Assembly (NCBI GenBank): GCA_033442325.1
Contig: JAWQFM010000001.1
Coordinates: 820,853-863,389, forward strand
Direction: 5' to 3'
Source of the DNA: Salpingoeca rosetta
Taxonomy: Eukaryota > Protista > Choanoflagellata
DNA: 42,537 nt
Notes under the pieces: model-generated
The model's input: the letters and a program-made list of their open reading frames with translations, nothing else
Database searches by the model: none
What the model was told of the DNA's origin: nothing
Translations under genes and position numbers: made by a program
In this document: piece by piece, positions 1-9,077 of the stretch
Numbering within the stretch: position 1 is the stretch's first letter
How the letters are laid out: each line of letters starts with the position of its first letter

Positions 1-32
1 ATTTTTCCCCCCCCCCCCCCCCTTGTGTGCAG

Positions 33-3000
33 CCTGCGCAGTAGTGCCTCCACTCCAATCCTGAAAGCTTCTGCAGCAGCCAAGGTACGCAGACGCGTGT
101 TAGCCTGGAGTTATATTCACGCATTCTCGTGTGAAGCGCTCGTACGAAGCGCTTCGAACCACCTTGCATGCCCTTCTGCGCGCTTGCATTCCTCCCCCCC
201 CCAAAAAAAAACAAATCACATGCGATGTGTTGCATCCACTCACCATGCCTGCCCTCTGCCCTCTGCTTGCTGTCTACAGATGCCTGCAACCGCCTCCCGA
301 CCGCAGTCCGCGCGACGTAGGGACAGCCTGCAGCTTGGCTCAGATACGAGCATGCAGACACGCACGTCCAAGTTCGACTTTCAGCCGCCGCCAGTCAGCC
401 CGGCTTCCAAGCGCACCGTGCGGCGTCCTCACGACAATCTTCGCCCAGCGGGCGCCCTGAGCCGCAACACCACATCCTCCGAGTATGGCAGTGCAAGCAG
501 CACGGCGCCAACCAGCCCAGCAGCCTCTGCTCCCCAGCAGCAGCCAAGCACCCGCCCCCGCATCACCCGTGTGCAATCTGGACGCAAGAATTCTGCGTCG
601 CCGCTCAAGAAGCCGAGCAGCACCAGCGCAGAACCGCTACTGCCTGCAAGCACCAAGCAACAGCAGCAGCAACAGCCGCAATCCCGCCGCCCAAAGGTCA
701 AGCGCGTGCCCATCAACCGCGACTCAGCGTCGCGCAAATCCTCCCAGTCACGCCCACGTGACAACCTTCGTTTTGAGGGGGAGCGCGAGCGCGAGACAGA
801 GTCGTCGCAGTACCGTGCGCCGGTGAGCGGTGAGCGGCAGGGGCCTGTTCGCCACCGTGACAGCCTGGTGTTTGATGGGCAGGACGAGCCTGCGACGACT
901 GTGATGCGGTCTGACTTTGGCGCCAAGGGCACGAGCGAGCGTGCGACGCCATCACGTGCACGTGACAACCTTCGTTTTGAGGGGGAGCGCGAGCGTGAGA
1001 CGGAATCGTCGCAGTACCGTGCGCCGGTGGGCGGTGAGCGGCAGGGGCCTGTTCGCCACCGTGACAGCCTGGTGTTTGATGGGCAGGACGAGCCTGCGAC
1101 GACTGTGATGCGGTCTGACTTTGGCGCCAAGGGCACGAGCGAGCGTGCGACGCCATCACGTGCACGTGACAACCTTCGTTTTGAGGGGGAGCGCGAGCGC
1201 GAGACGGAATCGTCGCAGTACCGTGCGCCGGTGGGCGGTGAGCGGCAGGGGCCTGTTCGCCACCGTGACAGCCTGGTGTTTGATGGGCAGGACGAGCCTG
1301 CGACGACTGTGATGCGGTCTGACTTTGGCGCCAAGGGCACGAGCGAGCGTGCGACGCCATCACGTGCACGTGACAGCCTTCGTTTTGAGGGGGAGCGCGA
1401 GCGTGAGACGGAATCGTCGCAGTACCAGTGGCCACCATCGCTCACAGAGCGGTTGAACGACCTTGAGCTTGAACCCGTGGTGCCCATGTCGTCCACACCT
1501 TCCAAGCCCGTCGAGGTCTCGTTTGCCGCCGTGAGCGCTCCAGCCGCTGCCCCTGCACAGGCGCAGGAGGTTGAAGAGCAGCCACCTGTGGTGGAACCGG
1601 CAAAGCCCATCGCTGTCGCTGATGACGCGCCACTGATTGCAGAGCTCAGATCGCCAATCAACCCAGTTGACTCGCTCGCCTTCAGAGGAGAAAGATTGAA
1701 CGAAAGCACGACAGTGACGACGTTTACGGCGCCCGTCGGAGCAGAGCGTCCGAAGAGCGCGCGGCGTGCGGACACGCTGAGGGGCGCGGGAGGGTGAGCT
1801 TGAGCGGAGCACGACGACCAAAGAGACGTTTGTTGGCGTGAGCGGGGAGCGCCCTGCGGCGTACGGGGACGTTGATCACCTTGTGCCTGAGGCAGGTGCG
1901 CGCGTTGAGGGGGCGAGCACGACGGTGACGACGTTTACGGCGCCCGTCGGAGCAGAGCGTCCGAAGAGCGCGCGGCGTGCGGACACGCTGACGGGCGGGG
2001 AGGGTGAGCTTGAGCGGAGCACGACGACGAAGGAGACGTTTGTTGGTGTGAGCGGGGAGCGCCCTGCGGCGTACGGGGACGTTGACCACCTTGTGCCTGA
2101 GGAAGGTGCGCGCGTTGAGGGGGCGAGCACGACGGTGACGACGTTTACGGCGCCCGTCGGAGCAGAGCGTCCGAAGAGCGCGCGGCGTGCGGACACGCTG
2201 AGGGGCGGGGAGGGTGAGCTTGAGCGGAGCACGACGACGAAGGAGACGTTTGTTGGCGTGAGCGGGGAGCGCCCTGCGGCGTACGGGGACGTTGATCACC
2301 TTGTGCCTGAGGAAGGTGCGCGCGTTGAGGGGGCGAGCACGACGGTGACGACGTTTACGGCGCCCGTTCGGAGCAGAGCGTCCGAAGAGCGCGCGGCGTG
2401 CGGACACGCTGAGGTGGCGGGGAGGATGAGCTTGAGCGGAGCTCGACGACGAAGGAGACGTTTGTTGGCGTGAGCGGGGAGCGCCCTGCGGCGTACGGGG
2501 ACGTTGACCACCTTGTGCCTGAGGAAGGTGCGCGCGTTGAGGGGGCGAGCACGACGGTGACGACGTTTACGGCGCCCGTCGGAGCAGAGCGTCCGAAGAG
2601 CGCGCGGCGTGCGGACACGCTGAGGGGCGGGGAGGGTGAGCTTGAGCGGAGCCCGACGACGAAGGAGACGTTTGTTGGCGTGAGCGGGGAGCGTCCTGCC
2701 GGCGTACGGGGACGTTGATCACCTTGTCCCTAAGGCAGGTGCGGCGCGTTGAGGGGGCGAGCACGACGGTGACGACGTTTACGGCGCCCGTCGGAGCAGA
2801 GCGTCCGAAGAGCGCGCGGCGTGCGGACACGCTGACGGGCGGGGAGGGTGAGCTTGAGCGGAGCACGACGACGAAGGAGACGTTTGTTGGTGTGAGCGGG
2901 GAGCGCCCTGCGGCGTACGGGGACGTTGACCACCTTGTGCCTGAGGAAGGTGCGCGCGTTGAGGGGGCGAGCACGACGGTGACGACGTTTACGGCGCCCG

Positions 3001-6000
3001 TCGGAGCAGAGCGTCCGAAGAGCGCGCGGCGTGCGGACACGCTGAGGGGCGGGGAGGGTGAGCTTGAGCGGAGCACGTCGACGAAGGAGACGTTTGTTGG
3101 CGTGAGCGGGGAGCGCCCTGCGGCGTACGGGGACGTTGATCACCTTGTGCCTGAGGAAGGTGCGCGCGTTGAGGGGGCGAGCACGACGGTGACGACGTTT
3201 ACGGCGCCCGTCGGAGCAGAGCGTCCGAAGAGCGCGCGGCGTGCGGACACGCTGAGGGGCGGGGAGGGTGAGCTTGAGCGGAGCACGACGACGAAGGAGA
3301 CGTTTGTTGGCGTGAGCGGGGAGCGCCCTGCGGCGTACGGGGACGTTGATCACCTTGTGCCTGAGGAAGGTGCGCGCGTTGAGGGGGCGAGCACGACGGT
3401 GACGACGTTTACGGCGCCCGTCGGAGCAGAGCGTCCGAAGAGCGCGCGGCGTGCGGACACGCTGAGGGGCGGGGAGGGTGAGCTTGAGCGGAGCACGACG
3501 ACGAAGGAGACGTTTGTTGGCGTGAGCGGGGAGCGTCCTGCGGCGTACGGGGACGTTGATCACCTTGTGCCTGAGGAAGGTGCGCGCGTTGAGGGGGCGA
3601 GCACGACGGTGACGACGTTTACGGCGCCCGTCGGAGCAGAGCGTCCGAAGAGCGCGCGGCGTGCGGACACGCTGAGGGGCGGGGAGGGTGAGCTTGAGCG
3701 GAGCACGACGACGAAGGAGACGTTTGTTGGTGTGAGCGGGGAGCGCCCTGCGGCGTACGGGGACGTTGACCACCTTGTGCCTGAGGAAGGTGCGCGCGTT
3801 GAGGGGGCGAGCACGACGGTGACGACGTTTACGGCGCCCGTCGGAGCAGAGCGTCCGAAGAGCGCGCGGCGTGCGGACACGCTGAGGGGCGGGGAGGGTG
3901 AGCTTGAGCGGAGCACGACGACGAAGGAGACGTTTGTTGGCGTGAGCGGGGAGCGCCCTGCGGCGTACGGGGACGTTGATCACCTTGTGCCTGAGGAAGG
4001 TGCGCGCGTTGAGGGGGCGAGCACGACAGTGACGACGTTTACGGCGCCCGTCGGAGCAGAGCGTCCGAAGAGCGCGCGGCGTGCGGACACGCTGAGGGGC
4101 GGGGAGGGTGAGCTTGAGCGGAGCACGACGACGAAGGAGACGTTTGTTGGCGTGAGCGGGGAGCGCCCTGCGGCGTACGGGGACGTTGACCACCTTGTGC
4201 CTGAGGAAGGTGCGCGCGTTGAGGGGGCGAGCACGACGGTGACGACGTTTACGGCGCCCGTCGGAGCAGAGCGTCCGAAGAGCGCTCGGCGTGCGGACAC
4301 GCTGAGGGGCGGGGAGGGTGAGCTTGAGCGGAGCACGACGACGAAGGAGACGTTTGTTGGCGTGAGCGGGGAGCGCCCTGCGGCGTACGGGGACGTTGAC
4401 CACCTTGTGCCTGAGGAAGGTGCGCGCGTTGAGGGGGCGAGCACGACGGTGACGACGTTTACGGCGCCCGTCGGAGCAGAGCGTCCGAAGAGCGCGCGGC
4501 GTGCGGACACGCTGAGGGGCGGGGAGGGTGAGCTTGAGCGGAGCACGACGACGAAGGAGACGTTTGTTGGCGTGAGCGGGGAGCGCCCTGCGGCGTACGG
4601 GGACGTTGATCACCTTGTGCCTGAGGAAGGTGCGCGCGTTGAGGGGGCGAGCACGACGGTGACGACGTTTACGGCGCCCGTCGGAGCAGAGCGTCCGAAG
4701 AGCGCGCGGCGTGCGGACACGCTGAGGGGCGGGGAGGGTGAGCTTGAGCGGAGCACGACGACGAAGGAGACGTTTGTTGGTGTGAGCGGGGAGCGTCCTG
4801 CGGCGTACGGGGACGTTGATCACCTTGTGCCTGAGGCAGGTGCGCGCGTTGAGGGGGCGAGCACGACGGTGACGACGTTTACGGCGCCCGTCGGAGCAGA
4901 GCGTCCGAAGAGCGCGCGGCGTGCGGACACGCTGACGGGCGGGGAGGGTGAGCTTGAGCGGAGCACGACGACGAAGGAGACGTTTGTTGGTGTGAGCGGG
5001 GAGCGCCCTGCGGCGTACGGGGTACGTTGACCACCTTGTGCCTGAGGAAGGTGCGCGCGTTGAGGGGGCGAGCACGACGGTGACGACGTTTACGGCGCCC
5101 GTCGGAGCAGAGCGTCCGAAGAGCGCGCGGCGTGCGGACACGCTGAGGGGCGGGGAGGGTGAGCTTGAGCGGAGCACGACGACGAAGGAGACGTTTGTTG
5201 GCGTGAGCGGGGAGCGCCCTGCGGCGTACGGGGACGTTGATCACCTTGTGCCTGAGGAAGGTGCGCGCGTTGAGGGGGCGAGCACGACGGTGACGACGTT
5301 TACGGCGCCCGTCGGAGCAGAGCGTCCGAAGAGCGCGCGGCGTGCGGACACGCTGAGGGGCGGGGAGGGTGAGCTTGAGCGGAGCACGACGACGAAGGAG
5401 ACGTTTGTTGGCGTGAGCGGGGAGCGCCCTGCGGCGTACGGGGACGTTGATCACCTTGTGCCTGAGGAAGGTGCGCGCGTTGAGGGGGCGAGCACGACGG
5501 TGACGACGTTTACGGCGCCCGTCGGAGCAGAGCGTCCGAAGAGCGCGCGGCGTGCGGACACGCTGAGGGGCGGGGAGGGTGAGCTTGAGCGGAGCACGAC
5601 GACGAAGGAGACGTTTGTTGGCGTGAGCGGGGAGCGCCCTGCGGCGTACGGGGACGTTGATCACCTTGTGCCTGAGGAAGGTGCGCGCGTTGAGGGGGCG
5701 AGCACGACGGTGACGACGTTTACGGCGCCCGTCGGAGCAGAGCGTCCGAAGAGCGCGCGGCGTGCGGACACGCTGAGGGGCGGGGAGGGTGAGCTTGAGC
5801 GGAGCACGACGACGAAGGAGACGTTTGTTGGCGTGAGCGGGGAGCGTCCTGCGGCGTACGGGGACGTTGATCACCTTGTGCCTGAGGAAGGTGCGCGCGT
5901 TGAGGGGGCGAGCACGACGGTGACGACGTTTACGGCGCCCGTCGGAGCAGAGCGTCCGAAGAGCGCGCGGCGTGCGGACACGCTGAGGGGCGGGGAGGGT

Positions 6001-6999
6001 GAGCTTGAGCGGAGCACGACGACCAAGGAGACGTTTGTTGGCGTGAGCGGGGAGCGCCCTGCGGCGTACGGGGACGTTGACCACCTTGTGCCTGAGGAAG
6101 GTGCGCGCGTTGAGGGGGCGAGCACGACGGTGACGACGTTTACGGCGCCCGTCGGAGCAGAGCGTCCGAAGAGCGCGCGGCGTGCGGACACGCTGAGGGG
6201 CGGGGAGGGTGAGCTTGAGCGGAGCACGACGACGAAGGAGACGTTTGTTGGCGTGAGCGGGGAGCGCCCTGCGGCGTACGGGGACGTTGACCACCTTGTG
6301 CCTGAGGAAGGTGCGCGCGTTGAGGGGGCGAGCACGACGGTGACGACGTTTACGGCGCCCGTCGGAGCAGAGCGTCCGAAGAGCGCGCGGCGTGCGGACA
6401 CGCTGAGGGGCGGGGAGGGTGAGCTTGAGCGGAGCACGACGACGAAGGAGACGTTTGTTGGTGTGAGCGGGGAGCGCCCTGCGGCGTACGGGGACGTTGA
6501 TCACCTTGTGCCTGAGGAAGGTGCGCGCGTTGAGGGGGCGAGCACGACGGTGACGACGTTTACGGCGCCCGTCGGAGCAGAGCGTCCGAAGAGCGCGCGG
6601 CGTGCGGACACGCTGAGGGGCGGGGAGGGTGAGCTTGAGCGGAGCACGACGACGAAGGAGACGTTTGTTGGCGTGAGCGGGGAGCGCCCTGCGGCGTACG
6701 GGGACGTTGACCACCTTGTGCCTGAGGAAGGTGCGCGCGTTGAGGGGGCGAGCACGACGGTGACGACGTTTACGGCGCCCGTCGGAGCAGAGCGTCCGAA
6801 GAGCGCGCGGCGTGCGGACACGCTGAGGGGCGGGGAGGGTGAGCTTGAGCGGAGCACGACGACCAAGACCGCTTACCGCACGTTTGTGTTTGTCCGCGAA
6901 CACGCATCGACGCATAAAGTGTCCGTAACCGAGTCAAAGGCCTGCGACACGGCCGAGTATGTGGACCTCAAACCCATCAACTTCGAACTCGCCGCGTGA
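33..6999 (+). CDS. Giant tandem-repeat protein, putative SAXO/STOP (Mn-motif)-like microtubule-binding protein; 5' partial, with frameshifts in the assembly
   Basis: Small exon ~33-84 (cag|...aag|gtacgc), intron to tctacag|280, then one long reading path through ORFs 25..1797, 1838..2473, 2470..2718, 2715..5030 and 5038..6999, joined by single-base insertions. Units follow ERP/Q-x5-7-D-x-L-x2-EG-x4-6-(S/T)T-x4-(F/Y). Stop TGA at 6997-6999. Confidence 0.75.
757..1425 (+). repeat. 204-bp coding tandem repeat (68 aa = 2 x 34 aa), ~3.3 copies
   Basis: cgtgacaacc/cgtgacagcc-ttcg recurs at 757, 961, 1165 and 1369. Unit: RDNLRFEGERERETESSQYRAPVGGERQGPVRHRDSLVFDGQDEPATTVMRSDFGAKGTSERATPSRA. Confidence 0.95.
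1705..6867 (+). repeat. 210-bp coding tandem repeat (70 aa = 2 x 35 aa), ~24.5 near-identical copies
   Basis: Unit STTVTTFTAPVGAERPKSARRADTLRGGEGELERSTTTKETFVGVSGERPAAYGDVDHLVPEEGARVEGA, repeated with a 210-nt period. Confidence 0.97.
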
Positions 7000-8283: not shown

Positions 8284-8377
<94 letters not shown>

Positions 8378-8555
8378 CACGCACCTGCGGACGAGGCGGT
8401 ATGCGTATGGGAGGCTTGCAGCAACCATCAGACCGTACGGCGTGTGCGTTGTGATGTCCCAGCAAATGTATGCCACGTCAAATGCAAAGCGTGACAGCCT
8501 GCCTGTGAGTCTCCTTGGCTGGCTGGGAGCAGAATCCTGGTCGTCCGCGAAACAA

Positions 8556-8654
<99 letters not shown>

Positions 8655-9077
8655 ACAACACAGAAACCAGTGAGCTTGGAAGGCAAGGTCGTGTGTTGTT
8701 CGCTTATGGCGATGACAACAGCATGGCTGTCAAGAGCATGTGGCGCAAGGGTACCAACATGCACTACAACTCACCAGCGCCTGCGCGTCGTCCTCAACAC
8801 GCGCTTCAGCTCTGTTGGCTGCCGTCCGGATCGGGGATCGTTCACGAACATGAGCGAAAGTACCAGTGATGAGTTCGAAAAAGAGCGCAAGTACATGGTT
8901 GGATAGGGTGGGGCACACAAACAGCCAAGACTAGGTTACACGCAGACACAGACACGGAGAGATAGAAAGAGACAAAGATGTTTACATCAAAAAAAAAAAA
9001 AAGAGAAAGAGAGATGGAGCAATAGACAGATAGACAGACACAAACACAGACACAACACAACTATACAGACATAGCAC

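What the first reader, a model, noticed from the sequence alone, without database searches (positions are those of the whole stretch)
280..6999. Giant protein made of ~55-60 SAXO/Mn-like 34-35-aa units: candidate microtubule-lumen filament or ruler
Seen: the 204-bp and 210-bp arrays each split into two half-units sharing one consensus. Examples are GAERPKSARRADTLRGGEGELERSTTTKETF, GERPAAYGDVDHLVPEEGARVEGASTTVTTF, GGERQGPVRHRDSLVFDGQDEPATTVMRSDF and TSERATPSRARDNLRFEGERERETESSQY. Degenerate copies occur upstream (RPQSARRRDSLQLG..TRTSKFDF; RRPHDNLRPAGALSRNTTSSEY) and at the C-terminus (STTTKTAY). Known: SAXO/FAM154 and MAP6/STOP proteins carry spaced (S/T)T-x4-(Y/F) Mn motifs that bind successive tubulin dimers, about a dozen in mammalian SAXO1. 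Inference: this >2200-aa protein is a greatly expanded member. At one unit per 8-nm dimer it could span about 0.4-0.5 um of a flagellar or cortical microtubule.
Basis: partly seen in the sequence, partly recalled or inferred. Interest (0 to 1): 0.75.

Follow-up and report, generated by a model that had tools for sequence, protein, structure and literature searches.

The report
Giant SAXO-like Mn-repeat protein, choanoflagellate
This expressed Salpingoeca rosetta gene, so far annotated only as a hypothetical protein, encodes about 56-59 tandem 33-35-residue units that are demonstrably related to the tubulin-binding Mn repeats of SAXO/MAP6 microtubule-lumen proteins, though its reading frame in the reference assembly is broken by six probably erroneous single-base insertions and microtubule binding is untested.

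Summary
The repeats are real: a 204-bp array (3.3 copies) and a 210-bp array (24.6 copies), each made of two half-units with one consensus. A profile scan finds 56 units, all in this locus. The window is Salpingoeca rosetta; the gene is PTSG_09485, a 2175-aa "hypothetical protein".

The ">2200-aa ORF" is not continuous here. Six +1 insertions (1787, 2367, 2415, 2699, 2743, 5023) shift the frame. The public model hides them with four mini-introns that RNA reads do not show. Short-read support collapses at the five sites tested, so they are probably assembly errors.

The gene is transcribed from the + strand and spliced (intron 85-279). At least one further 5' exon lies in an N run upstream.

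The SAXO reading is largely supported, indirectly. Pfam SAXO1-2 does not hit the protein. But a profile of its own units retrieves spider proteins that are SAXO1-2 positive (E to 7e-20). BLASTP to one gives 4e-9, in register over several units. That spider protein's only PDB hit is bovine SAXO1 in a sperm microtubule lumen.

It lacks the SAXO N-terminal Cys cluster, and its main array is acidic. It is best called a divergent, greatly expanded Mn-repeat protein. Lumen binding at one unit per 8 nm is inferred, not shown. An unverified scan note reports a second Mn-type array elsewhere in this genome.

The parts
33..84 (+). Upstream exon (5' UTR or coding; open in frame 1, no ATG). It is spliced to an exon that lies further upstream, in the N run before the window.
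   Evidence: an RNA contig of X18 joins 30-82 to 278-784. Five RNA reads and one contig have a loose end before 30. The sequence shows an AG acceptor at 31-32 and a GT donor at 85-86.
85..279 (+). Intron, 195 nt, GT..AG
   Evidence: joint 82>278 (cut +2) with GT..AG ends; stranded RNA depth is 0 in 95-282. Sequence.
280..486 (+). Annotated start codon (280-282, first base of the exon) followed by two degenerate Mn-like units (283-381 weak, 382-486)
   Evidence: matches at window 292-372, E 0.9, and 394-486, E 1e-6. The public model starts here.
487..714 (+). Ser/Pro/Gln-rich basic linker without units
   Evidence: Translation. The N-terminal 505 aa have pI 9.95 and 9.9% Pro.
715..1425 (+). 204-bp array: seven alternating half-units of 33 and 35 aa (types D and C)
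   Evidence: (748-1426, 3.3 copies), and (seven matches at window 733-1422). RNA depth is 5-17.
1426..1620 (+). Unique Pro/Ala/Glu-rich linker between the two arrays
   Evidence: Single-copy contigs 1397-1743 are present in RNA and DNA runs.
1621..1725 (+). Transitional unit leading into the 210-bp array
   Evidence: (window 1627-1725, E 2e-6).
1705..6867 (+). 210-bp array, 24.6 copies, equal to about 49 half-units of 35 aa (types A and B). Both types carry the [TS][TS]x4[YF] Mn signature.
   Evidence: Inter-unit substitutions are 21 synonymous against 5 non-synonymous in the repeat frame. RNA piles up at 30-130x on the clean units.
1787..1787 (+). Extra C relative to the unit consensus (frame 1 to 2). 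An in-frame stop follows at 1795-1797.
   Evidence: DNA contig depth is 0 in 1787-1880 in 3 runs. At 1837 and 1852, 4 of 5 and 5 of 6 RNA reads carry another unit's letters.
2367..2415 (+). Two extra T (2367 and 2415; frame 2 to 3 to 1)
   Evidence: In bin 2351-2444 RNA depth is 2 against 45-53 beside it, and DNA contig depth is 0. At 2443, 4 of 4 reads show the consensus letter.
2699..2743 (+). Extra C (2699) and extra G (2743) (frame 1 to 2 to 3)
   Evidence: In bins 2633-2800 RNA depth is 6 and 0 against 79 beside them, and DNA contig depth is 0.
5023..5023 (+). Extra T (frame 3 to 1); not tested with reads
6877..6999 (+). Unique 40-aa C-terminal tail and stop codon
   Evidence: RNA reads run from the last unit into this tail (loose ends at 1821 and 2242). 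A similar tail follows the last unit in an ENA fragment, P0028.

Best explanation
The locus is the expressed Salpingoeca rosetta gene PTSG_09485. It encodes one very long, intrinsically disordered protein of roughly 2200 aa.

Layout: a basic N-terminal part, then 7 units of a 33/35-aa pair, then about 49 units of a 35/35-aa pair, then a short tail. Each unit is a divergent Mn repeat of the MAP6/SAXO superfamily.

Steps that are inferred, not shown:
- The rest of the unit (the ER...R..D.L...G part) spans to the next dimer.
- The chain therefore runs along one protofilament at one unit per 8 nm, about 0.45 um in all, and stabilises flagellar or other stable microtubules.

The six single-base insertions that break the frame in the reference are most likely assembly errors. 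The four mini-introns of the public model are artefacts made to bridge them.
For: Expression and strand:
- Stranded RNA reads all have the first mate on the - strand.
- A GT..AG intron lies on the + strand.
- A spliced contig is present in a second, older RNA run.

Coding constraint:
- The repeat frame has no stops over 5.2 kb once the six insertions are allowed for.
- Inter-unit changes are 21 synonymous to 5 non-synonymous.

Insertions as errors:
- All five tested sites fall in bins where DNA contig depth is 0 in three runs and RNA depth drops 10-40 fold.
- No RNA joints appear at the model's mini-introns.
- The six insertions sum to a multiple of three, so the first and last frames agree.

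Homology:
- The unit profile A1 gives 114 hits in 1.84 billion proteins.
- These include Monosiga brevicollis MONBRDRAFT_5765 (BLASTP 1e-24) and a Hartaetosiga balthica protein.
- Four spider proteins among them score 70-122 bits on Pfam SAXO1-2, against a cut-off of 26.5.
- SAXO1-2 is the only recurrent family among 110 hits.
- BLASTP to P0012 gives 4e-9, aligned in register over several units.
- hhalign A1 vs A4 gives 97.2% probability, E 3.7e-11.
- P0012 matches only bovine SAXO1 of PDB 8OU0, E 7.4e-12.

Mechanistic precedent:
- The Mn signature is [TS][TS]x4[YF], a short helix between tubA and tubB (PMC10973386).
- The 32-aa SPM1 repeat equals one Mn, spans 8 nm and follows one protofilament (PMC8144581).
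- SAXO proteins extend along protofilaments in the lumen (bioRxiv 10.64898/2026.08.28.747525).

An AF2 model of four half-units is disordered (pLDDT 40), as expected for such chains off the lattice.
Against: - Pfam SAXO1-2 does not hit this protein at E up to 10, nor the genome in six frames.
- Direct PDB searches with the protein or its unit profiles give nothing significant. SAXO1 appears only at E 4.1. The ESM Atlas gave no usable hit.
- The link to SAXO is therefore transitive, and the units used for hhalign were chosen by the same profile.
- There is no N-terminal Cys cluster. The main array has pI 5.1 and 5.6% Pro, unlike described SAXO proteins (PMC3280300).
- Units C and D miss the strict signature by one residue.
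- No localisation, proteomic or binding data were found.
- No read directly shows the sequence without an insertion, and the insertion at 5023 was not tested.
- Copy number in a repeat this uniform may be mis-assembled.
Confidence: 0.6

Rival explanations
1. The protein descends from Mn-repeat proteins but works differently. It could be an outer-surface MAP, a centriole or basal-body component, or a disordered scaffold unrelated to the lumen. The massively amplified acidic units would then have lost, or changed, tubulin binding.
For: The main array is acidic (pI 5.1), poor in proline and lacks the Cys cluster. Pfam SAXO1-2 fails. The near-identity of the units (98%) shows recent amplification, so the length may not be finely tuned. 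No localisation data exist.
Against: The positions conserved between choanoflagellate and spider units include the TT...F/Y helix positions that contact tubulin in solved structures (PMC8144581). Synonymous changes dominate between units. Every Mn-repeat protein characterised in the papers read here is microtubule-bound.
Confidence: 0.22
2. The likeness to Mn repeats is convergence of a short, compositionally simple motif. The protein would be a lineage-specific repetitive protein of unrelated function.
For: The Mn signature is short, and its authors say single units are too short and divergent for significant profile matches (PMC10973386). The direct Pfam and PDB searches failed. Repeats inflate summed scores: spurious Baculo_LEF-10 and Ribosomal_L6 hits are seen.
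Against: About nine spaced positions over 34 residues are shared, not just TT..F. BLASTP with composition adjustment gives 4e-9, with successive units in register, including the alternation of two unit types. Eight of 110 profile hits are SAXO1-2 positive and no other family recurs.
Confidence: 0.08
3. The frameshifts are real. The gene would then make only a protein of about 505 aa ending at 1797, with the 210-bp array as untranslated or decaying sequence.
For: The insertions are in the reference assembly and were accepted by its annotators. No read was seen that directly shows the insertion-free sequence at 1787, and no indel rows were listed.
Against: There is no short-read support for the insertion-bearing stretches in three contig runs and one raw RNA run. 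The array keeps an open repeat frame and a 21:5 synonymous excess. The six insertions sum to zero net shift, and the last frame carries a conserved tail. The array is transcribed at the level of the 5' part.
Confidence: 0.1

Closest known systems
SAXO1/SAXO2 (FAM154A/B; Pfam PF05217 SAXO1-2), with bovine SAXO1 in PDB 8OU0
   Same: Repeated units end in a [TS][TS]x4[YF] motif and are spaced about 33-35 aa apart. An R/K-P-x-D motif lies upstream of each. There is significant transitive similarity through spider SAXO1-2-positive proteins.
   Different: The Pfam model does not detect it. It has about 56-59 units against about 12 (PMC3280300). The units are near-identical tandem copies. It has no N-terminal Cys cluster, and its array is acidic and not proline-rich.
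Toxoplasma gondii SPM1 (PDB 7MIZ)
   Same: Tandem, near-regular repeats, each with one Mn motif. The repeat length of 32 aa is close to 33-35 aa. In SPM1 one repeat spans one tubulin dimer (8 nm) along a single protofilament in the lumen (PMC8144581). This is the best working model for the present protein.
   Different: SPM1 has 6 repeats and conserved terminal domains. It partners thioredoxin-like MIPs in cortical microtubules.
Monosiga brevicollis MONBRDRAFT_5765 and a Hartaetosiga balthica transcript protein (uncharacterised)
   Same: These are the direct homologues. BLASTP gives 1e-24 at 39-44% identity. The Monosiga protein has the same alternation of two unit types, in a 73-aa pair repeated about 13 times.
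   Different: They are shorter (1306 and 317 aa) and have different unit lengths (36/37 aa). Nothing is known of their function.
MAP6/STOP and MAP6d1
   Same: They share the Mn module superfamily, and MAP6 is intraluminal (PMC7112752; PMC12228683).
   Different: MAP6 has only a few Mn modules plus Mc repeats and a palmitoylated Cys-rich N-terminus. No direct similarity was detected here.

Membership tests
SAXO family (Pfam PF05217 SAXO1-2) | Match to the Pfam SAXO1-2 model above its gathering score | tested here: not met
   No hit at E up to 10 for three ORF pieces. No hit in a six-frame scan of the whole genome, though that search also rang in no control genome.
SAXO family (Dacheux et al. 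2012 definition) | N-terminal cysteine cluster (motif 1) | tested here: not met
   There are 0 Cys in the first 505 aa from ATG 280. Caveat: the 5' end of the gene is not fully visible, because an upstream exon lies in an N run.
SAXO family (Dacheux et al. 2012 definition) | Repeated Mn-like motif of about 15 aa followed by an inter-repeat of about 18-20 aa | tested here: met
   Units are 33-35 aa with one motif each and are strictly periodic. The published spacing is in PMC3280300.
SAXO family (Dacheux et al. 2012 definition) | Basic pI and high proline content (11-20%) | tested here: not met
   The main array has pI 5.1 and 5.6% Pro. Only the N-terminal 505 aa are basic (pI 9.95, 9.9% Pro).
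Mn-repeat superfamily (MAP6/SAXO/SPM1/FAP363) | Minimal signature [TS]-[TS]-x4-[YF] in each unit | tested here: met
   By inspection of the translations, both unit types of the 210-bp array (about 49 units) fit exactly. Types C and D of the 204-bp array are off by one residue. The signature is from PMC10973386.
Mn-repeat superfamily (MAP6/SAXO/SPM1/FAP363) | Statistically significant sequence relationship to accepted members | tested here: met
   The relationship is transitive. Profile E is 7e-20 to 1e-11 to SAXO1-2-positive proteins. BLASTP gives 4e-9. hhalign gives 97.2%. The intermediate hits bovine SAXO1 at 7e-12. Direct searches against PDB SAXO1 are not significant (E 4.1).
Mn-repeat superfamily (MAP6/SAXO/SPM1/FAP363) | [quoted passage not shown] | not testable with these tools
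   No multimer modelling with tubulin is on hand. The single-chain AF2 model is disordered. No proteomic or localisation record was found.

The most novel reading that the evidence does not exclude
PTSG_09485 could be the building block of the unidentified 'rail-MIP'. This is the choanoflagellate-specific filament that runs along the A-tubule lumen near protofilaments A13/A1 in a subset of S. rosetta doublets (PMC9671500). More generally, it could be a luminal molecular ruler: about 56-59 near-identical units would set a domain of about 0.45 um, or tile end to end, along stable microtubules.
Probability: 0.1. Interest if true: 0.8.

Novelty: new variant of a known kind. Interest (0 to 1): 0.58.

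Why it matters
- The original SAXO study reported no orthologue in the choanoflagellate Monosiga (PMC3280300). This gene and its Monosiga and Hartaetosiga homologues show that the closest relatives of animals do have Mn-repeat proteins, in a form that current Pfam models miss.
- With about 56-59 near-identical units it is, within what I could compare, the longest and most regular Mn array. That makes it a natural test of the rule of one Mn per tubulin dimer, and a candidate for unexplained luminal densities in S. rosetta flagella.
- S. rosetta is genetically tractable, so the prediction can be tested directly.
- Practically, the reference assembly and the public model of this gene need correction: six suspect bases, four artefactual introns and a hidden 5' exon.

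Tried and rejected
Searches that gave nothing or were not sensitive enough:
- Pfam on three ORF pieces gave only spurious repeat-driven hits (Baculo_LEF-10, OB_ChsH2_C, RTX), all with no single passing stretch.
- A PF05217 six-frame scan of the genome found nothing, but its controls were silent too, so this is a weak negative.
- phmmer of the pieces and hmmsearch of unit profiles A1 and A2 against PDB gave nothing significant; SAXO1 appeared only at E 4.1.
- The ESM Atlas feature search gave no usable hit.
- AF2 on four half-units gave pLDDT 40 and was uninformative, so no fold search was run.
- A spider SAXO segment searched against the own genome matched nothing, not even this locus, so that query is insensitive.
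- PTSG_09485 was not found in the full-text paper library, nor in the held supplements of the S. rosetta RFX paper. The ciliome preprint has no held supplements, and the journal version is not held.

Steps that could not be completed:
- The upstream DNA that should hold exon 1 reads N (L001 4565-6000), so the 5' end could not be completed.
Coordinates were used instead.
All searches used uninterrupted pieces by reference, or the public model as a tool returned it.

Readings rejected: a trypanosomatid origin (my first guess) and a secreted or vane protein. The annotated start has no signal-peptide-like N-terminus and the protein has no hydrophobic segment.
Full report
**1. What is in the sequence**

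Tandem Repeats Finder reports two arrays. One has a 204-bp period at 748-1426 (3.3 copies, 98% matches). The other has a 210-bp period at 1705-6867 (24.6 copies, 98% matches), with a weaker 105-bp sub-period.

Translating the + strand shows four half-unit types:
- Two types of 35 aa in the 210-bp array (A and B).
- Types of 35 aa and 33 aa in the 204-bp array (C and D).

Aligned with the degenerate copies near the N-terminus, the transitional unit and the last unit, they share one 34-position consensus. It has ER at positions 7-8, R13, D16, L18, G23, TT at 28-29 and F/Y at 34 (alignment A1).

A six-frame scan of the whole genome with a unit profile finds 56 matches. All lie in window 292-6876.

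**2. The reading frame is broken**

The ORF is not continuous. Aligning all 25 units to their consensus locates six single-base insertions: 1787 +C, 2367 +T, 2415 +T, 2699 +C, 2743 +G and 5023 +T. They move the repeat frame 1>2>3>1>2>3>1. As assembled, frame 1 from ATG 280 stops at 1795-1797.

The protein-library search returned the public model of this very locus. It is Salpingoeca rosetta PTSG_09485 (XP_004989916.1, UniProt F2UL53), a "hypothetical protein" of 2175 aa.

Mapping that model back gives exon blocks 280-1749, 1787-2317, 2419-2709, 2748-5021 and 5050-6996. The annotators bridged every frameshift with a gap ("intron") of about 26-100 nt between blocks.

**3. Read evidence**

I laid one raw stranded RNA run, one older RNA contig set and two DNA contig sets on window 1-2800.

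(a) Transcription and splicing
- All RNA pairs have the first mate on the - strand, which in the usual stranded libraries means a + strand RNA. Depth is 2-17 over 283-1786.
- A spliced RNA contig joins about 82 to 278 with GT..AG, and RNA depth is 0 in between.
- From the sequence the intron is 85-279, and ATG 280 is the first base of the next exon.
- Reads and a contig have a common loose end before position 30. An acceptor AG lies at 31-32, so exon 33-84 is spliced to a further upstream exon.
- The genome upstream of the window reads N for 1.4 kb, so the first exon is hidden.
- The 85 nt of leader that are visible have no ATG and are open in frame 1. ATG 280 is therefore plausible, but it is not proven to be the start.

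(b) No support for the mini-introns
- None of the model's three mini-introns in this stretch appears as a joint.

(c) No short-read support at the insertion sites

| Bin | Insertions in bin | RNA depth | DNA contig depth |
|---|---|---|---|
| 1787-1880 | 1787 | 9.7, mostly reads from other units | 0 in all three contig runs |
| 2351-2444 | 2367, 2415 | 2, against 45-53 beside it | 0 in all three contig runs |
| 2633-2800 | 2699, 2743 | 6 and 0, against 79 beside them | 0 in all three contig runs |

- For comparison, single-copy flanks have depth 88-95 in run X13.
- At 2443, 4 of 4 reads show the consensus letter.
- At 1837 and 1852, 4 of 5 and 5 of 6 reads carry the letters of a different unit.

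The insertion-bearing stretches therefore have no short-read support. Holes in contig sets do not prove absence, no read directly showed the insertion-free junction, and 5023 was not tested. I put about 85% on these being assembly errors.

Internal evidence agrees:
- The six shifts cancel.
- The repeat frame has no stop over 5.2 kb.
- Substitutions among the 21 clean units are 21 synonymous to 5 non-synonymous.
- All six insertions lie in or next to three paralogous "landmark" unit pairs. This looks like stitching of an array that could not be assembled from the reads then available.
- k-mer depth in X13 (about 1500 against 95) suggests at least about 16 copies, so the copy number is approximate.

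**4. What the units are**

- No Pfam SAXO1-2 hit at E up to 10.
- None in a six-frame scan of the genome, though no control genome rang either.
- No significant PDB hit with the protein pieces or with unit profiles.
- Nothing from the ESM Atlas.

An exhaustive HMMER search of 1.84 billion proteins with the profile of this protein's own units gave 114 hits at E up to 1e-3. They include:
- The Monosiga brevicollis protein MONBRDRAFT_5765, with 27 units in 73-aa pairs. BLASTP gives 1e-24 at 39-44% identity.
- A Hartaetosiga balthica protein.
- An ENA fragment with the same C-terminal ending.
- Many uncharacterised arthropod proteins.

Four spider proteins among the hits (profile E 7e-20 to 1e-11) score 70-122 bits on Pfam SAXO1-2, against a cut-off of 26.5. 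Scanning 110 hits, SAXO1-2 is the only family found more than once, in 8 members.

Further links:
- BLASTP of the N-terminal 505 aa against spider P0012 gives E 4e-9. Successive units are in register and the two alternating unit types are matched to two alternating types in the spider protein.
- hhalign of S. rosetta units against units of the SAXO-positive spiders gives 97.2% probability, E 3.7e-11. The spider units were picked by the same profile, which is a caveat.
- P0012's only PDB match is bovine SAXO1 in entry 8OU0, the sperm tubulin-SAXO1-SPACA9 model, at E 7.4e-12.

The chain S. rosetta protein - spider SAXO-like proteins - mammalian SAXO1 is therefore statistically sound at each link.

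**5. Comparison with the family definition**

Published features:
- Dacheux et al. (PMC3280300) define SAXO proteins by four features. These are an N-terminal Cys cluster, Mn-like motifs of about 15 aa with T/S and F/Y six residues apart, inter-repeats of 18-20 aa, and high proline with a basic pI. They found no orthologue in Monosiga.
- Andersen et al. (PMC10973386) give the minimal signature [TS][TS]x4[YF], a helix of about 7 residues that binds between alpha- and beta-tubulin.

Here:
- Unit length and periodicity fit.
- Units A and B (about 49 copies) fit the signature exactly. Units C and D are off by one residue.
- There is no Cys in the first 505 aa.
- The main array is acidic (pI 5.1) with 5.6% Pro.

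I therefore file it as a divergent, greatly expanded member of the Mn-repeat superfamily, not as a SAXO1/2 orthologue.

**6. Likely mechanism (inferred)**

- In Toxoplasma SPM1 each 32-residue repeat holds one Mn motif and spans one tubulin dimer (8 nm) along a single protofilament in the lumen. The short helix sits at the intradimer interface (PMC8144581).
- SAXO proteins in sperm and spermatid microtubules behave likewise (bioRxiv 10.64898/2026.08.28.747525).
- By analogy, 56-59 units of 33-35 aa would cover about 0.45 um of one protofilament. The A/B alternation would give a 16-nm super-period.
- The isolated chain is predicted to be disordered (pLDDT 40). This fits fold-on-binding but proves nothing.
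- The acidic charge argues against binding the acidic outer surface, and so mildly favours a luminal site or a different role.

No localisation or proteomic record was found.

**7. A speculative link**

Cryo-ET of S. rosetta flagella described a filamentous "rail-MIP" of unknown identity (PMC9671500). It runs along the A-tubule lumen in 39% of repeats, enriched in doublets 5-7 and seen proximally. A giant Mn-repeat chain is a reasonable candidate component. However, a 3.5-nm filament is thicker than one extended chain, and nothing ties the two together yet.

**8. Limits**

- I did not build or search a joined or frame-corrected protein. Pieces were searched by reference.
- Another first-stage note (s1-433459) reports a second Mn-type array elsewhere in this genome. 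My profile scan did not find it, and I did not examine it.

**Verdict**

- The SAXO/Mn interpretation is largely supported at the level of homology.
- The function is unproven.

Noticed in passing
window 1750-1786, 2318-2418, 2710-2747, 5022-5049: The public gene model PTSG_09485 contains four very short 'introns' that each skip a frameshift site. None is seen as a splice joint in RNA reads over 1-2800. The reference annotation and assembly of this gene need correcting.
   Followed up: yes
L001 4565-6000 (immediately upstream of window position 1): A run of about 1.4 kb of N abuts the window start. DNA contigs of two runs continue with real sequence there, and RNA reads splice into it, so at least one 5' exon of this gene is hidden.
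   Followed up: partly
P0018 (Monosiga brevicollis MONBRDRAFT_5765): The Monosiga homologue scores 60 bits (cut-off 27) on Pfam Ribosomal_L6 with no single passing stretch. A uL6 chain also turns up weakly in PDB searches with the unit profile. This is a repeat-driven false positive that could mislead automatic annotation.
   Followed up: partly
P0002-P0006, P0010, P0011, P0013 (ant, phylloxera and beetle proteins, an unnamed JGI/IMG protein and others whose sources I did not look up): Large uncharacterised proteins of up to 3573 aa, arthropod where I looked up the source, carry dozens of 29-aa units of the type ER-x4-(R/K)P-x-DNL-x-PEG-x-F. This is a shortened relative of the same unit. The eight scanned (P0005-P0007, P0009-P0011, P0013, P0019) have no Pfam family above cut-off; P0010 scores 18 bits on SAXO1-2, below its 26.5 cut-off; P0002-P0004 were not scanned.
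   Followed up: partly
window units starting 1705/1916, 2548/2760, 4650/4860: Three pairs of adjacent units share the same variant pattern (E63A in the first unit; R26T plus two synonymous changes in the second). This points to a higher-order repeat or to assembly stitching. All six insertions lie in or beside these pairs.
   Followed up: partly
window 8293-8384 and 8551-8660: Long microsatellites, (CA)46 and (AAC)36, lie downstream of the gene. More CA-rich sequence lies upstream of the N run (L001 4430-4564).
   Followed up: no
My unit-profile scan of the genome found matches only in the present locus, so that array, if real, is a different sequence family.
   Followed up: no
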